A DNA stretch of 63,362 bases, the filler included, from Octopus bimaculoides (Eukaryota): NCBI RefSeq assembly GCF_001194135.2. It is 7 parts of 7 records of this genome, joined end to end, with 100 filler letters (N's around TTAATTAATTAA, not from the genome) between each part and the next. Parts side by side here need not be neighbours in the genome. Positions count along the whole stretch, not along the records: positions 47,844 to 53,130 come from NC_069000.1; 6 more parts are not named here. One strand, written 5' to 3'. The first letter of the stretch is position 1, and each line of letters starts with the position of its first letter. This document shows positions 47,844-54,138 of the stretch, in pieces. The notes below the pieces were generated by a model, which saw nothing but the letters and a program-made list of their open reading frames with translations, was not told the DNA's origin and did not search any database. The translations under genes were made by a program, and so were the position numbers.

Positions 47844-48502
47844 CCATTAGTGGCACAATTCCCACCAACGGAGCTTCGGGACACGCCGGCGGTACACTAC
47901 CGGGCTCCGGCCGTGTTCCGTTCTTCTTTTTCTTCTTTTTTTTGGGGAGCACTGGAATAGGACGCACTTCTACCTTGGCAGAAGGTCCTCCTCCTCCCCC
48001 ACAACTTTTGGTGAGCAACCATTGTTGCTCACCTTTCTTTTCTTCCCTTTCTTTGAGGAGGTTTCCACCTCCTCTCCCTCCACTGGGAGAGCGGAGTGAA
48101 TAACATTTATTAACTATTCCAGGACCTTACTCTGGTCCTGGGGGCAGTCTTTCTTAATGTGACCAGGCTCCAGACACAGGTGACACTTGGGTGGACGTCC
48201 TTCAAGAATTACAGGATATCTGTGCCCAGCCATCATAAAAAAATCTGGAAATACCAGATCTTTGGCTGATTGGGTCCACATGGTCAAAACAGCTTTTGAC
48301 CCAACCCAATCAGCCGATGGAAGTATTTTCACATTAAGGAGCTTGGCTCCGCTGCCACCCGGCCCCTGGTGGATTGTGTCCTCAATCCACTCAGGCTCAA
48401 TACTGAGTGGCAGCCCACACACCCAAGCTCTTCCCACAGTATGTGGGAAGAGACAGAATTTTTTCCCCTTCTAAGGGCTGGCTCGCAAACTTGCGAGCCA
48501 CC
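47844..48502 (-). mobile_element. Non-LTR retrotransposon ORF1 fragment (L1/Tx1-type) with CCHC zinc knuckle
   Basis: VILEGRPPKCHLCLEPGHIKKDC (CX2CX4HX4C) in ORF 48114-48437; both sides bounded by gaps. Confidence 0.65.
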
Positions 48503-48602
48503 NNNNNNNNNNNNNNNNNNNNNNNNNNNNNNNNNNNNNNNNNNNNNNNNNNNNNNNNNNNNNNNNNNNNNNNNNNNNNNNNNNNNNNNNNNNNNNNNNN
48601 NN

Positions 48603-49250
48603 TCTTTCATCGTCGTTCAAACGTCTGAATTTCAAAATAGCCAGTAGTATTACAGAACAGTGAGCGAACGGTAATACAAGAAATTTTCGACAAAAGATTA
48701 AACACGTGTAAAGTGTTTGAAGAATGAATTTCTTTGTAATGTAAAGAAAACGTATTTTTATATAAATTGAACGTGTGACATATTGCTTCCGTTCAACAAA
48801 TGTATTCTTTGCAGGATGTATAGCAAAGTGGTAGTTAAACACATTAGTAGCTGCAAAAGAAAACAGGAACTAATATGTAAAATAAACACACAGACAGACA
48901 CAACTGCATGCTTGCTTACATACTGACATTTGACAAGAAACAATTTCATACTAGTATGTAAGGTGGCTATTCCGTTTAATATCCTGGCTTACACACCGAA
49001 CAATATATAATAATAATTACATAATTACCTACACTTATGAATTTGTCGTATTTGTTACGTAAATAAACATTATTTGAAATATAAAAATCATGCTGAAAAA
49101 TCCGAAGAAATCGCGATTATATATAGCTGAAATGAGTTTTCGCATGTATGATGCAGCAAATTCATATTGTCTACACATGTGATTAGAAGGAAGATGTGTA
49201 AATCGTGAAAAGTGCAACAAAGTACAATAAAAACTGCATATATATATATA
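48603..49250 (+). repeat. Direct repeat copy 1 (about 0.64 kb) upstream of the microexon array
   Basis: Colinear, roughly 90% identical by eye, with 52477-53110; starts tctttcatcgtcgtt and ends in the same ctgca(ta)n; 5' side bounded by an N gap. Confidence 0.9.
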
Positions 49251-49270
49251 TATGTGTGTGTGTTTGTGTT

Positions 49271-49301
<31 letters not shown>

Positions 49302-49308
49302 ACATGTG

Positions 49309-49381
<73 letters not shown>

Positions 49382-49548
49382 ATTCATACATGTATATATT
49401 ACTGAAAATACGAGTGCTGTTGAGAAAATTTGAGATCTACAAGACGTAGTTAGCTACTATGATTCCCTATGTAATCGCCACATAACTATGCATTCTGCTT
49501 TAAAGCATCTTTCCAAATATTTAATTACATATTTCATTAATTTCACAG

Positions 49549-49578
49549 AAGTTATAACGGAGAAAGTAACACGCACAG
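49549..49578 (+). CDS. 30-nt coding microexon 1 (class X), phase 1-1, (E)VITEKVTRT
   Basis: ttaatttcacag|AAGTTATAACGGAGAAAGTAACACGCACAG|gtaagc; similar to exon 5 at 51302; phase 1 is the only frame open across all six exons. Confidence 0.8.
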
Positions 49579-49910
49579 GTAAGCTGCCGAAGAATCTTTT
49601 CTCATGATGTGTACCAATAAGCTAGATATGTAACATATATTTCGACGTTAATTCTTTAGTAAAATGAAAGCAAAATTCCTCCAACTAATCAATTAGTATT
49701 TCTTTCATGTAAGCAATTTCGATTCTGTTAAAGTATGACGATAGGTTTGTAAAGTGTTTCCTTGAATTGTGGTAACTGGATTGGACTCGTAAATTTATCA
49801 TTTGAAAACCACTCATTCTATATGACTTCAATATATTTAATAGTTGTCTGTCATAATAAATAGTGTGATGTAAGTGTTGAGGGTTTATATTTACGTTTGC
49901 CTTTCTCTAG

Positions 49911-49940
49911 AAACTCGTTCTGAAGTGGAGTCTACAGTTG
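49911..49940 (+). CDS. 30-nt coding microexon 2 (class S), phase 1-1, (E)TRSEVESTV
   Basis: tttgcctttctctag|AAACTCGTTCTGAAGTGGAGTCTACAGTTG|gtgagt; paralogous to exons 4 and 6. Confidence 0.85.
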
Positions 49941-50490
49941 GTGAGTGAGAGATTATTTTCGTGATTTCCTGCTTATGCTTGTCGCTGAGTTACCTTAGAG
50001 AAGTCTTCGTAAATATTGTTGAAAGAGAATAAATATTCATTAAGAAATAAGATAATTAGTAATGGACGAAGGATAGCATCTTAAAGATTGAGATGCTGTG
50101 ATACTTTATTTGCATTTCAATATAATAGCTTGTAAACCGAGTCGCTTCCTACATCTGAAACGTATTGTGTAATTTTATCATGTTAAAATTGAAGTGCCTA
50201 TGATTATTTGCAGAGAAACTTTATTTGATAGAAAGTAACTCGTCTGAAAATATATTCACATCGCACTAACGTGTAAATTAATAATCGCAATAAATATTTC
50301 GATATATATTCTCTGCGCTACATATATATACTATGAAAAAGTATTGAAAGAATAAAGCGAATCATGCAGTGCGAAATCGCTGGGTGAAATGCTTTGCAAT
50401 TGCAAAACAAGATTGATATATTGGTAGAGATTAGTGATGTATTCTTCAGCTCTCAGCATGAAATTCACATTTCATTTAATTATTTCACAG

Positions 50491-50520
50491 ATGTTGTGCA
50501 ACAGGACGAGCGTCCTAAAG
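50491..50520 (+). CDS. 30-nt coding microexon 3 (divergent class X), phase 1-1, (D)VVQQDERPK
   Basis: ttaattatttcacag|ATGTTGTGCAACAGGACGAGCGTCCTAAAG|gtgaga; same length, phase and atttcacag acceptor as exons 1 and 5. Confidence 0.75.
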
Positions 50521-50916
50521 GTGAGAGAACTTCAGTTTACGAACTTATCTCGATAGATCTAGCTTTCTATTTAACTACCTCACTATAACTTGTTTGGAAA
50601 TGCGTAATGTATTAAACGAAATGAATCGTGTATTGTTGATATATGCTTGTAATATATCAAATTTGACGTCGCTTTTACCAAAAGTTACTGTTTACTGTCT
50701 CCCTCCTATATAATCGAAGTGAACCTATATTGTCGCATTGAATTTAAGATAATATATTGTTCTGCATTTTATTGCAATACTTTATGAAATATAACTTTAA
50801 AATAGGTATGTGTATTTTTGTGAATGAATGTTTGGTTATCTACCTAACTATGTCTACGTATATTATATCTGTATGAGGTGAAATGCTGATTATATTGTCT
50901 TTCATTCCCTATTCAG

Positions 50917-50946
50917 AACAACCATCTGAGGCTGAAGCCACAGTTG
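50917..50946 (+). CDS. 30-nt coding microexon 4 (class S), phase 1-1, (E)QPSEAEATV
   Basis: ctttcattccctattcag|AACAACCATCTGAGGCTGAAGCCACAGTTG|gtaagt. Confidence 0.85.
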
Positions 50947-51301
50947 GTAAGTGTCTCCGAATTTGCTACCGTTTTAATGTAACAAATCCCTATGATTAAT
51001 AGTTATAGTACATCATTATTAATTTTGAATTTACTATATATAGTGGGAGGTGTGCTAGAAAAATAATCGCTCAGTTAATAACTTATTGTGGCGGATTTCT
51101 TTTATATAGAAATTACCGAATTTCTACATAACATTTTCATGTTAAATTATATTATTTACAAATTTATCAGAAATATTTATCTACGCGTTTTCGTGCGTCA
51201 CCTCCTTGCTAATATTTAATTGTATCAAACGTCATTAAAAATCTTGACTGTTGCGAAATGGCCGATGACATAGTTAACGATTTACGTTTTGAATTTCACA
51301 G

Positions 51302-51331
51302 AAATTATCAGAGAAACCGAAACTCGCATAG
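51302..51331 (+). CDS. 30-nt coding microexon 5 (class X), phase 1-1, (E)IIRETETRI
   Basis: ttttgaatttcacag|AAATTATCAGAGAAACCGAAACTCGCATAG|gtaaga. Confidence 0.8.
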   Translation, partial: KLSEKPKLA

Positions 51332-51692
51332 GTAAGAAGATTTGATATTATGGCATAGAGTTAGTTAAAATTCAATATATACTGTCCGTATATTTTCCTG
51401 TATAAATGTTTTCTCTTAAATTCGCGAATTAATTTTGAATTTGCTTAGTGAACGTCGGAGTTTTATCAAATAATCATAAATCTTTATTGAATACATAATG
51501 ATGCTCCATTCAACTACAGACCGAATATGTAACGTTAACGTATGAGTGTATCAGTGTAATAAAAGCATTTTACAGAGATCATATGTGGTCTGTTACTTAA
51601 GAAGACATATGAACGAACATTTACACAGTATATATTTTCCTATCGAATAATTTAGCAACATTCTTATTGTACTTTATTTTGATTTCGTTCAG

Positions 51693-51722
51693 AAAAACCA
51701 TCTGAAGTTGAATCTACCGTTG
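51693..51722 (+). CDS. 30-nt coding microexon 6 (class S), phase 1-1, (E)KPSEVESTV
   Basis: ttttgatttcgttcag|AAAAACCATCTGAAGTTGAATCTACCGTTG|gtgagt. Confidence 0.85.
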
Positions 51723-52476
51723 GTGAGTTTAATATGTAATAATTTCATTCGCTTTCAATGTTTAGGCTTACTGTCACTTGTCAGGTATATCAGAAATTGC
51801 TAGCTAAAGAAAGTCACGCAAAAATATATTTCATTACACCTAACATTGTCTACTCACAGACATACATTGATACGATCACACTGCTTGCTTTTACGAAGGA
51901 AATCAAATAGAGGCATCGATTCCTGGTCCGGATTTACATGAACAATTTCCATATGCTACACTGCAGAAGTGGCGAGATATCGAGCGATATATGCTATATT
52001 AAGAAGGGAAACAATATAATACGCAACCCCATTTCGAATTCTTTGCATATCGCACCATATCGTCTTGAATGTGGATGTATATTAAACTATTACTGCCCAA
52101 TTTCTTTTGTTTAATTTATTACCAACATTTCTTATTTATACGACTTTATCTCATTCTAAATATATAAAAAATATCTTTATTACAATCTTTTGAATGACAC
52201 TCCAATCTAGATGACGAACTAAAGATATCTAAAAGGAATACAAGTTTTGCAGAAATATGTTAGATTATCATTCTGGTCGTTAAAAAAGGACCATGGGCAC
52301 TAATGGTCTAAGATTGTTGAAAATGCAGAACACTCAGAAATATATCCATGTTTTTTCCACATTGCATTGCGCTTTCTCCACACACGTGTTTGCTTTGCGA
52401 ATTTCAAACGTGCTACTTAGCAGTTGTTGGTGTCAAATGTTTCGTCGCTTCGTTGTGACAGTCGATTTGTTCCATT

Positions 52477-53110
52477 TCTTTCATCGTCGTTTAAACGTCT
52501 GAAGTTCAAAATAGCCGGTAGTAATAGAGAACAGTGAGCAAACGGAAATACAAGAAATTTTCGACAATAGATTAGACTCGTGAAAAGTGTTTGAAGAATG
52601 AACTTGTTTGTAATGTAAAGAAAACGTATTTTTATATAAATTGAATGTGTGACATATTGCTTCCGTTCAACACATGTATTCTTTGCAGTATGTATAGCAA
52701 AGTGGTAGTTAAACACATTAGTAGCTGCAAAAGAAAACGGAAACTAATATGTACAATAAACACAAAGACAGACACAGCTGCATGCTGGCTTACATACTGA
52801 CATTTGACAAGAAACAATTTCATACTAGTATGTAAGGTGGCTATTCCGTTTAACATCCTGACTTACACACCGAACAATATATATTAGTAATTACATAATT
52901 ACCTAAACTTATGAATTTGTCGTCTTTGTTACGTAAATAAACATTATTTGAAATATAAAAATCATGCGGAAAAGTCCGAGGAGATCGCGATTATATATAG
53001 CTGAAATGATGTTTCGTATGGATGATGCAGCAAACTCATATTGTCTACACATGTGATTAGAAGGAAGATGTGTAAATCGTAAAAAGTGCAACAAAGTACA
53101 AAATAATCTG
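52477..53110 (+). repeat. Direct repeat copy 2, 3874 bp downstream of copy 1
   Basis: Matches 48603-49250 and runs through (TA)n into the 100-N linker gap at 53131-53230. Confidence 0.9.
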
Positions 53111-53130
53111 CATATATATATATATATATA

Positions 53131-53230: not shown

Positions 53231-54138
53231 ATATATGAAAATAAAAACTAATAATAATAATAAAGCAGAATGCTAAACTGATAGCATATTTTAATATAGA
53301 TGTGTATAAGGAAGATTTAAAAGGATTTCTAGCCGGCTTTCACTGCATGGCAAATTTTCAAGAAGAGGGAAAATGAAAATAATGTTTTTTACAAAAAAAG
53401 AAAATATATATTAAAAAAATAAATGTACCAATATATTATATTGCCTTTGAGCTTTTAAAGTTCAATGCGAGAGAAAAGCCGAAGAAATTTTTCCTGATAT
53501 TGTTTGAAGTTGATTCGCTTTTTCTCTCCTTTGATTTCTTTGAGGATAATGCCACAAAGTGACGGACATGTGTTTGGAAAGTAATCGTGTTGCACTATGT
53601 CTATGTGTTATAATCCCGAGTTGTGCAGGTGGCGCAAGGGAGGGTGTCCTGACCTTGCACAAATTCTAAATTTCATTTTAAGGTCATCTGAGGAACGCTC
53701 GTGGTTTATTCTCCCTATTATGCAAATGATTTAATGTTGACGGTTGAAAGTTTTGTTCGGGGAAATTAAGTTTCAATACATTCAAAAGTCGAGATCTGTC
53801 ATGATTCTTATTCCTTAGAGATTGTTGTCTGGTGTACTTCAGTTCTGGCAATATGTAGCTTGGTGTGTGAAGACAACAAGTGACATCAGCATTCTAGACA
53901 AATAGATAGTAAATACATACATATGCATATATATATATATATAACGAAAGCAGAAAATGGAGAAATATCGATGAACAACAATTCACTTACATCAGTTATT
54001 ATTATTATTATTGTTTATTCAATACAAATACACTGCATATGGTTAAGCATATGTAATATACCAGTAGTGTAGTGGATACTTTAACCCCTTAGTCGGTCAT
54101 TTTAACCTCTAACTCAGCTAGCCTATCTATCTATCTAT

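What the first reader, a model, noticed from the sequence alone, without database searches (positions are those of the whole stretch)
49549..51722. Array of six 30-nt, phase 1-1 microexons encoding an acidic repeat peptide (micro-exon-gene-like locus)
Seen: six segments, each exactly 30 nt, preceded by a pyrimidine-rich YAG and followed by GTRAG, separated by 0.33-0.55-kb AT-rich introns. Each ends in G, so every junction codon is GAA or GAT. Phase 1 is the only frame open in all six (phase 0 is closed in exons 1 and 5; phase 2 in exons 2, 3, 4 and 6). Spliced product: EVITEKVTRT ETRSEVESTV DVVQQDERPK EQPSEAEATV EIIRETETRI EKPSEVESTV (17 acidic residues of 60). Established: symmetric short exons can be skipped in any combination without frameshift, as in Schistosoma micro-exon genes and the cassette exons of titin/projectin PEVK regions. 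Inference: this is part of a cephalopod gene whose repeat length or composition may be tuned by combinatorial exon skipping, for example an elastic or disordered linker or a variable secreted protein. I do not recognise the gene, and ORF finders miss it. At 30 nt the exons are just above the 27-nt cut-off often used for neural microexons.
Basis: partly seen in the sequence, partly recalled or inferred. Interest (0 to 1): 0.9.

Follow-up and report, generated by a model that had tools for sequence, protein, structure and literature searches.

The report
Six 30-base coding micro-exons in a row
Six tiny 30-base exons with strong splice signals lie in a row and spell an acidic repeated peptide; they look like real, selected exons of an unidentified animal gene that gene finders and huge protein databases miss, but nothing here shows expression or exon skipping.

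Summary
The only six AG|30 nt|GTRAG matches on the + strand are at the stated coordinates; about 0.33 are expected by chance.

Internal evidence says these are selected coding exons:
- They form two alternating classes, a 20-residue repeat split over two exons and present three times.
- Exon bodies, exact length, phase and splice signals are kept, while the five introns show no similarity above shuffled controls.
- Differences between sister exons are most often synonymous in the proposed frame.
- Exon GC is 43% against 30% in the introns.

A 651-nt direct repeat (93.7% identical, 3,874 bp apart) flanks the block. The block may therefore be one unit of a larger tandem repeat.

Every outside search was empty: two very large protein collections, Pfam, PDB, metagenome DNA and paper text. 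Host gene, organism, expression and skipping remain untested.

The architecture resembles tropoelastin, titin PEVK and schistosome micro-exon genes, but composition or sequence fails membership in each. Best reading: an acidic, probably extended spacer in an unannotated modular protein. The feature is real, moderately interesting, and needs transcript data.

The parts
49549..49578 (+). Micro-exon 1 (odd class), 30 nt, phase 1-1, encodes (E)VITEKVTRT. Acceptor tttcacAG, donor CAG|GTAAGC.
   Evidence: donor matches CAG|GTRAGT at 8 of 9 positions, the best of 285 GT sites; acceptor is at the 93rd percentile of 215 AG sites.
49911..49940 (+). Micro-exon 2 (even class), 30 nt, phase 1-1, encodes ETRSEVESTV. 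Acceptor ctttctctAG, donor TTG|GTGAGT.
   Evidence: acceptor at the 99th percentile. 77% identical to exon 6.
50491..50520 (+). Micro-exon 3 (odd class, the most diverged), 30 nt, phase 1-1, encodes DVVQQDERPK. Acceptor tatttcacAG, donor AAG|GTGAGA.
   Evidence: Shares the ATTTCACAG|A acceptor with exons 1 and 5 (family D6). Its body is only 43-47% identical to them.
50917..50946 (+). Micro-exon 4 (even class), 30 nt, phase 1-1, encodes EQPSEAEATV. Acceptor ccctattcAG, donor TTG|GTAAGT.
   Evidence: 80% identical to exon 6.
51302..51331 (+). Micro-exon 5 (odd class), 30 nt, phase 1-1, encodes EIIRETETRI. Acceptor gaatttcacAG, donor TAG|GTAAGA.
   Evidence: 67% identical to exon 1. The 67-nt stretch around it is 70% identical to the stretch around exon 1 (family D4).
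51693..51722 (+). Micro-exon 6 (even class), 30 nt, phase 1-1, encodes EKPSEVESTV. Acceptor gatttcgttcAG, donor TTG|GTGAGT.
49579..51692 (+). Span holding the five short AT-rich introns (332, 550, 396, 355 and 361 nt), interrupted by exons 2-5. Away from the splice sites the introns share no detectable similarity.
   Evidence: local alignment scores of all ten intron pairs lie within the range of shuffled controls. GC 0.30 against 0.43 in the exons.
48603..49253 (+). Upstream copy of a 651-nt direct repeat. It begins at the edge of the N gap and ends at a (TA)n(TG)n(TA)n microsatellite.
   Evidence: colinear with 52477-53127, no indels, 93.7% identical, K2P distance 0.066.
52477..53127 (+). 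Downstream copy of the same direct repeat, 3,874 bp after the first and cut off by the end of the piece. If the block repeats in tandem, the next exon 1 would lie near 53423, outside the piece.

Best explanation
The six segments are genuine protein-coding internal exons, all phase 1-1, on the + strand of a multi-exon animal gene that could not be identified.

Origin (inferred from the sequence). They are three old copies of a two-exon module. The odd exon reads E-[VI]-[IV]-x-[EQ]-x-[VE]-[TR]-[RP]-x. The even exon reads E-x-[PR]-S-E-[VA]-E-[SA]-T-V. The protein therefore carries a 20-residue repeat with each half on its own 30-nt exon. Selection has held the exon bodies, their exact length and phase and their splice signals, while the introns have diverged beyond recognition.

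Splicing (inferred). Ordinary U2-type splicing is likely. The introns are short (332-550 nt), which would allow recognition across the intron. The donors are strong (G|GTRAG), the acceptors have pyrimidine tracts, and the exon bodies are purine-rich with many GAR triplets that could act as splicing enhancers.

Product (inferred). It is acidic (net charge -9 per 60 residues), rich in E, V and T, and has no Cys, Gly or aromatic residues. No confident fold is predicted. It is most likely an extended, flexible, charged spacer or spring segment within a larger modular protein.

Skipping (a property of the sequence; its use is untested). Every exon starts with A[AT] and ends with G. Any subset can therefore be skipped in frame, and each new junction again makes a GAA or GAT codon.

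Higher-order repeat (inferred). The block lies between two copies of a 651-nt direct repeat spaced 3,874 bp apart. The simplest reading is that the six-exon block is one unit of a younger tandem duplication and that more units lie beyond the piece.
For: - Six exact AG|30 nt|GTRAG sites against 0.33 expected by chance, with a maximum of 3 in 2000 simulations.
- One common open frame across all six.
- Similarity between sister exons stays within the exon, about 25 nt of acceptor and 6 nt of donor. Even-class exons are 63-80% identical and the donor hexamers 83-100%. Flanks further out are 20-40% identical, which is background. All ten intron pairs score no better than shuffles.
- Codon differences between sister exons are 11 synonymous to 32 non-synonymous in the proposed frame, against 5:41 and 2:40 in the other two frames. 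In the four closer pairs, 19 of 34 differences fall at codon position 3.
- The donors take 6 of the 12 best U1-consensus scores among 285 GT sites. The acceptors are at the 93rd-99th percentile of 215 AG sites.
- Exon GC is 0.43 against 0.30 in the introns. Purine content is 0.59 against 0.48. GAR triplets are 2.5 times denser in the exons.
- A degenerate pattern for the even-class exon matches only these three sites in the whole window, with 0 expected.
- The flanking direct repeat is shown.
- No confident fold is predicted: mean pLDDT 67 with pTM 0.29 for the 60-mer, and pLDDT 51 for a doubled 120-mer.
Against: - There is no evidence of expression of any kind.
- No protein in a 5.8-billion-sequence word index shares even three 5-residue words with the peptide. 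A full HMMER scan of 1.84 billion representatives gave one compositional hit, a bacterial coiled-coil protein. If the source genome's annotation or transcript assemblies are in those collections, they do not contain these exons.
- The sample is small: six exons and 180 nt.
- The synonymous and non-synonymous counts come from non-independent pairs.
- The shared open frame alone has a chance probability of only 0.03-0.07.
- The body of exon 3 is barely more similar to exons 1 and 5 than chance would give.
- The flanking repeat could be two copies of a dispersed element rather than a tandem unit. Both of its outer ends are hidden.
- No other exon or domain of the supposed host gene is visible in the 5.3 kb.
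Confidence: 0.7

Rival explanations
1. The exons are the spring region of a giant muscle protein of the titin / sallimus / projectin kind. An array of symmetric exons encodes an extensible segment whose length is set per muscle type by exon skipping. This is a more specific version of the best explanation.
For: - Same-phase short repeat exons fit the pattern: TTN has 85% symmetric exons and NEB 97% (PMC9222585).
- PEVK-coding exons of Drosophila sls are spliced out or retained according to muscle type, and molluscs are reported to have two titin homologues (bioRxiv 10.1101/2024.09.30.615857).
- The peptide is E/V/T-rich and acidic, with no confident fold.
- A young segmental repeat lies around the block.
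Against: - P+E+V+K is 50% of residues and proline only 5%. From my own knowledge, about 70% or more is typical of titin PEVK.
- No similarity to any titin-like protein was found in 1.84 billion representatives.
- No Ig or Fn3-like open stretch lies in the piece.
- The exons are 30 nt, whereas vertebrate PEVK exons are roughly 75-85 nt (own knowledge).
Confidence: 0.25
2. The array belongs to a micro-exon gene in the schistosome sense. Such a gene encodes a small secreted protein made mostly of tiny symmetric exons, and exon skipping produces a pool of variants.
For: Very small symmetric exons make up all the coding sequence visible in the piece. MEGs are described in exactly those terms (PMC4350168).
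Against: - MEG products all have a signal peptide, and the families appear restricted to platyhelminths. No signal-peptide exon is in the piece.
- No sequence relative exists in the databases, which should hold annotated schistosome MEGs.
- The exons here are uniform in length and are tandem repeats of one module. From my own knowledge this is not typical of MEGs.
Confidence: 0.1
3. The islands are real or former exons that are no longer translated: non-coding RNA exons, or a decaying duplicated exon array in a dead gene.
For: No protein or transcript evidence was found anywhere. The neighbourhood holds a retroelement fragment, a microsatellite and a scaffold gap.
Against: All six keep intact AG and GTRAG signals, an exact length of 30 nt and one open frame, even though the introns are saturated with change. 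Changes are biased to the third codon position and towards synonymous differences in that frame. Long neutral decay would have broken several of these features.
Confidence: 0.1
4. The block is the interior of a non-autonomous repeat element bounded by long direct repeats (LTR-like). The 'exons' would then be captured or fortuitous sequence carried by that element.
For: Two direct repeats of at least 651 nt at 93.7% identity bracket a 3.2-kb interior with no long ORF.
Against: The ends of the repeat cannot be seen, so no TG...CA termini or target-site duplication can be checked. This reading does not explain the selective conservation of six splice-flanked, frame-preserving 30-mers inside otherwise diverged sequence.
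Confidence: 0.05
5. The pattern is a chance coincidence of splice-like motifs in AT-rich DNA.
For: AT-rich sequence holds many AG and GT dinucleotides: 215 and 285 in 4.5 kb.
Against: Six observed against 0.33 expected, and never more than 3 in 2000 simulations. The exons are also paralogous to one another, share one frame and are richer in GC than their surroundings.
Confidence: 0.01

Closest known systems
Tropoelastin (ELN) gene architecture
   Same: In tropoelastin every splice site is phase 1:1 and two classes of short exon alternate along the gene. Any exon can therefore be removed like a cassette without a frameshift (bioRxiv 10.1101/2024.12.03.626628). Here too all six exons are 1-1 and two classes alternate strictly.
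   Different: Tropoelastin exons vary in length. They encode Gly/Val/Pro-rich hydrophobic domains and Lys-Ala cross-linking domains. This peptide has no Gly, is strongly acidic and shows no sequence similarity. Elastin is a vertebrate protein (own knowledge).
PEVK spring region of titin (and insect Sallimus / projectin)
   Same: It is a long run of short symmetric exons encoding a low-complexity, E- and V-rich, unfolded segment. TTN has 85% symmetric exons (PMC9222585). The sls PEVK exons are included or skipped according to muscle type.
   Different: Here the exons are 30 nt, and P+E+V+K is only 50% with 5% Pro. No Ig or Fn3 exon lies nearby and no homology was found.
Schistosome micro-exon genes (MEGs)
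   Same: Most of the coding region is made of very small symmetric exons, which allows protein variation by skipping (PMC4350168).
   Different: MEG products are secreted, with a signal peptide, and the families appear restricted to platyhelminths. Their micro-exons are of mixed lengths rather than a uniform tandem repeat (own knowledge). No sequence relation was found.
5' alternative mini-exons of fast skeletal troponin T (TNNT3)
   Same: A cluster of very short exons (exons 4-8) is alternatively spliced (PMC2447309). It encodes an acidic hypervariable N-terminal segment (own knowledge).
   Different: Only about five exons of differing lengths are involved, in a small well-known gene. They are not a periodic 10+10-residue repeat and show no homology to this peptide.
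54-bp exons of fibrillar collagen genes
   Same: Many exons of one fixed short length each encode a whole number of peptide repeats (own knowledge).
   Different: Collagen exons are phase 0-0 and encode Gly-X-Y. The exons here are phase 1-1 and contain no glycine.

Membership tests
Schistosome micro-exon genes (MEG) | Most of the coding region consists of very small symmetric exons (PMC4350168) | tested here: inconclusive
   True for the 5.3-kb piece: six 30-nt 1-1 exons and no other coding candidate. The rest of the gene is outside the piece.
Schistosome micro-exon genes (MEG) | The product has a signal peptide and is secreted or membrane-anchored | not testable with these tools
   The 5' end of the gene is not in the piece. 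No Met-initiated hydrophobic exon is visible.
Schistosome micro-exon genes (MEG) | Sequence belongs to one of the described MEG families, which are restricted to platyhelminths | tested here: not met
   No protein shares words with the peptide. HMMER against 1.84 billion representatives gave only a bacterial coiled-coil protein.
Schistosome micro-exon genes (MEG) | Transcript variants are generated by skipping of micro-exons | not testable with these tools
   No transcript data are available.
Titin-type PEVK spring segment | Tandem run of short exons, all in the same phase | tested here: met
   Six consecutive phase 1-1 exons.
Titin-type PEVK spring segment | Composition dominated by P, E, V and K (about 70% or more; own knowledge) | tested here: not met
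   P+E+V+K is 30 of 60 residues, with only 3 prolines. T (9), R (5) and S (5) are prominent.
Titin-type PEVK spring segment | Embedded in a gene with Ig / Fn3 domain exons | tested here: inconclusive
   No stop-free stretch in the piece looks like a domain, but only 5.3 kb can be seen.
Titin-type PEVK spring segment | Detectable similarity to known titin, sallimus or projectin sequences | tested here: not met
   No hits (Pfam) or 42 (PDB sequences).
Tropoelastin | All exon borders are phase 1:1 and two exon classes alternate | tested here: met
   The feature is defined in bioRxiv 10.1101/2024.12.03.626628.
Tropoelastin | Hydrophobic Gly/Val/Pro exons alternate with Lys-rich cross-linking exons | tested here: not met
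   No Gly, 15 Glu, net charge -9.
Neural microexon programme (SRRM4 / eMIC-dependent) | Exons of 27 nt or less with a UGC motif just upstream of the 3' splice site (own knowledge) | tested here: not met
   The exons are 30 nt. TGC lies within 20 nt of the acceptor only at exon 2, at -13.
Fibrillar collagen 54-bp exon array | Phase 0-0 exons encoding Gly-X-Y triplets | tested here: not met
   Phase 1-1 and no glycine.

The most novel reading that the evidence does not exclude
The piece samples a long, unannotated, lineage-restricted gene region built from many 3.9-kb units of six uniform 30-nt phase-1-1 micro-exons. It would encode a sequence-orphan acidic 20-residue repeat whose copy number in the protein is set tissue by tissue through combinatorial exon skipping. 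That would be a micro-exon repeat gene outside flatworms, and one invisible to standard annotation and short-read spliced alignment.
Probability: 0.15. Interest if true: 0.7.

Novelty: new member of a known kind. Interest (0 to 1): 0.5.

Why it matters
Arrays of 30-nt exons are a blind spot. ORF finders see nothing. Ab initio gene predictors rarely call such exons. A 100-150-nt read crossing them would need four or five junctions with anchors of 30 nt or less.

If the block is one unit of a larger tandem array, a sizeable repeat-coding region of some gene is missing from the annotation. That would fit the complete absence of the peptide from protein collections of billions of sequences.

The locus is also a clean small example of how a peptide repeat can be built and kept at the exon level. 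Half a repeat sits on each exon, with fixed length and phase, and the junction codon is recreated whatever exons are joined. This is the architecture that lets elastin, titin and schistosome MEGs vary a protein by exon skipping. Whether that variation is used here can be tested directly once the source species is known.

Tried and rejected
- Word-indexed protein search with the 60-residue peptide: no candidate.
- Full HMMER scan of 1.84 billion representative proteins: one hit at E = 5.7e-06, a bacterial coiled-coil repeat protein. I judged it compositional.
- Pfam scan of the peptide: nothing.
- PDB sequence search at E up to 10: nothing.
- Full-text search of papers for the six peptide strings: nothing.
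- Paper searches for '30-bp exons', 'tandem microexons' and similar terms: nothing relevant.
- Organism identification through the gag-like ORF at 48114-48437: only a CCHC zinc knuckle and no homologue.
- Two exact-pattern scans of metagenome contigs, one with the even-exon consensus and one with a conserved 28-mer from the spacer: empty.
- Exact look-up of two window ORFs in the assembly index: not on record.
- Rfam search: only sub-threshold microRNA matches on the (TA)n/(TG)n microsatellite, rejected as artefacts.
- Search for further exons: no other 10-residue window on either strand resembles the six peptides. No stop-free stretch of 45 or more codons looks like a protein domain.
- Structure prediction: a beta-hairpin at residues 2-25 of the 60-mer (pLDDT 81-86) was not reproduced with confidence in a doubled 120-mer (pLDDT 51). 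I draw no fold from it and did not run a fold search on such weak models.
- An alignment of circular permutations of the modules, meant to feed the predictor, only re-aligned identical segments and was dropped.
- One protein search was left unused because no query would add new words.
Full report
**What was checked.** I read the piece (47844-53130) in full. It has three parts:
- A fragment of about 50% GC at 47844-48502.
- A 100-N scaffold gap at 48503-48602.
- 4.5 kb of about 31% GC sequence that holds the finding.

- A scan for AG + 30 nt + GT[AG]AG finds six sites on the + strand, at 49549-49578, 49911-49940, 50491-50520, 50917-50946, 51302-51331 and 51693-51722. There are no others.
- 2000 first-order Markov simulations of the same sequence give a mean of 0.33 sites per strand and never more than 3. 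The - strand has 1.
- Among all YAG...GTRAG spacings from 9 to 149 nt, 30 is the only one that occurs more than three times.
- Introns are 332, 550, 396, 355 and 361 nt.
- The translation is EVITEKVTRT ETRSEVESTV DVVQQDERPK EQPSEAEATV EIIRETETRI EKPSEVESTV, with 17 acidic and 8 basic residues.
- A shared open frame alone would occur in 3-7% of sets of six random 30-mers. It is supporting evidence, not decisive.

**Are they real exons?** No outside data could be brought to bear, so the case rests on internal comparison. That comparison is fairly strong.
- The exons fall into two strictly alternating classes. Even exons 2, 4 and 6 are 63-80% identical to each other. Odd exons 1 and 5 are 67% identical. 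Exon 3 is the diverged member at 43-47%, but it keeps the class-specific acceptor ATTTCACAG|A.
- Similarity stops at the exon edges. It covers about 25 nt of acceptor region and the 6-nt donor (donors 83-100% identical within the even class, 67-83% within the odd). Flanks further out are 20-40% identical, which is background.
- None of the ten intron pairs gives a local alignment score above its shuffled controls. The three two-exon modules are therefore old duplicates. Their introns are saturated with change, yet exon sequence, exact length, phase and splice signals have been held. This is what purifying selection on exons looks like.
- In the proposed frame, codon differences between sister exons are 11 synonymous to 32 non-synonymous, against 5:41 and 2:40 in the other two frames. 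In the four closer pairs, 19 of 34 nucleotide differences fall at codon position 3. For example, SEVESTV in exons 2 and 6 differs at three bases, all synonymous. The pairs are not independent and the numbers are small.
- The six donors take half of the 12 best matches to CAG|GTRAGT among 285 GT dinucleotides. The six acceptors rank at the 93rd-99th percentile of 215 AG sites on a simple pyrimidine-tract score.
- Exons are 43% GC against 30% for the introns. They are richer in purines (0.59 against 0.48) and carry 2.5 times more GAR triplets. This is the usual contrast between exon and intron, and GAR triplets are a plausible splicing-enhancer content for very short exons (that last point is inference).

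**Surroundings.**
- No other 10-residue window on either strand resembles the six peptides.
- No stop-free stretch of 45 or more codons looks like a protein domain.
48603-49253 matches 52477-53127 colinearly, without indels, at 93.7% identity (K2P 0.066), with a start-to-start spacing of 3,874 bp.
- The upstream copy starts at the N gap and the downstream copy runs into the end of the piece, so the true ends of the repeat are unknown.
- The simplest reading is that the six-exon block plus a spacer of about 1.7 kb is one unit of a younger tandem duplication, with the next exon 1 near 53423. Two copies of a dispersed or LTR-like element remain possible and cannot be excluded here.

**Searches outside the window were all empty.**
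- Word-indexed search of 5.8 billion proteins: no candidate shares three 5-residue words with the peptide. Even a single one of these exons in any stored protein would have been enough.
- HMMER scan of 1.84 billion representatives: one hit, a bacterial coiled-coil repeat protein, which I judged compositional.
- Pfam, PDB sequences, two metagenome DNA scans, exact-product look-ups and full-text peptide searches: nothing.
- The gag-like ORF next to the gap has only a CCHC zinc knuckle and no homologue.
- The absence of the peptide from such large collections has two possible readings. The source's annotation and transcripts may miss these exons, which is plausible for 30-nt exons. Or the exons may not be expressed. 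I cannot tell which.

**The product.**
- Composition is E 15, V 9, T 9, R 5, S 5, I 4, K 3, Q 3, P 3, D 2, A 2. Net charge is -9 per 60 residues. There is no Cys, Gly, Met, His or aromatic residue.
- AlphaFold2 without an alignment gave mean pLDDT 67 and pTM 0.29, with a beta-hairpin at residues 2-25 (pLDDT 81-86).
- A doubled 120-mer gave pLDDT 51 and pTM 0.28, with long low-confidence strands.
- I take this as no confident fold, with some beta-strand propensity from the alternating V/I/T pattern. It is compatible with an extended flexible segment, but the evidence is weak.

**How it most likely works.**
- Shown by the sequence: six splice-competent, frame-compatible, selectively maintained 30-nt exons encode a 20-residue repeat three times. 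Every exon begins with A[AT] and ends with G, so any join between two of them recreates GAA or GAT and keeps the frame.
- Inferred: ordinary U2-type splicing across short introns, an acidic extended spacer or spring within a larger modular protein, and more blocks beyond the piece.
- Untested: expression, tissue, and whether exons are ever skipped.

**Comparison with known systems.**
- *Tropoelastin.* This is the closest architecture. All its borders are phase 1:1, two exon classes alternate, and cassette-like removal is used. Composition fails membership.
- *Titin-type PEVK regions.* These are runs of symmetric short exons. TTN has 85% symmetric exons, and the sls PEVK exons are muscle-type specific. 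Composition (P+E+V+K 50%, Pro 5%) and the lack of homology fail membership.
- *Schistosome MEGs.* They share the tiny symmetric exons, but MEGs are secreted, carry a signal peptide and appear restricted to flatworms. Nothing here meets those criteria.
- *Neural microexons.* This class does not fit: the exons are 30 nt and only one of six acceptors has a nearby UGC.
- *Collagen 54-bp exons.* Phase 0 and Gly-X-Y do not fit.

**Verdict.** The feature is real and very unlikely to be chance. It is best read as a new, sequence-orphan example of a known kind of gene architecture: a tandem array of short symmetric exons encoding a peptide repeat. The unusual points are the uniform 30-nt length, the half-repeat-per-exon layout and the complete absence of relatives. 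Interest is moderate. It would rise if transcripts show a long array with combinatorial skipping.

Noticed in passing
window 47844-48502 (- strand ORF 48114-48437): A fragment of about 50% GC, unlike the 31% GC of the rest. It carries a 107-codon ORF ending ...CHLCLEPGHIKKDCPQDQSKVLE with a CCHC zinc knuckle (Pfam PF00098, E 6.2e-05). It is probably a gag-like remnant of a retroelement. No homologue was found in the protein collection. It is joined to the micro-exon sequence only through the scaffold gap, so the adjacency is unverified.
   Followed up: partly
window 48503-48602: A run of exactly 100 N, a conventional scaffold gap. It hides the upstream end of the 651-nt direct repeat and any preceding exon block.
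   Followed up: no
window 49236-49378: A compound microsatellite (TA)n(TG)n(TA)n of about 140 nt lies 170 nt upstream of exon 1. The second copy of the flanking repeat also ends in (TA)n at the edge of the piece. Weak Rfam matches here (mir-297, mir-466, mir-1277; 23-33 bits against gathering scores of 81-90) are repeat artefacts.
   Followed up: yes
window 48603-49253 and 52477-53127: A 651-nt direct repeat, 93.7% identical with no indels, 18 transitions and 23 transversions. It has no ORF of note and no match to Rfam. It could be a tandem-unit spacer or a dispersed element. Its true boundaries are not visible.
   Followed up: partly
window 50388-50585: Exon 3 sits inside a 66-codon stop-free stretch in the coding frame. 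An ORF finder therefore lists a 64-residue 'ORF' (50394-50588) whose only meaningful part is the 10 residues of the exon.
   Followed up: yes
window 47924-47943: A T-rich run (ttctttttcttctttttttt) that reads as a lysine run on the - strand, inside the GC-rich fragment. It may be a poly(A)-like tail or a low-complexity part of the retroelement remnant.
   Followed up: no
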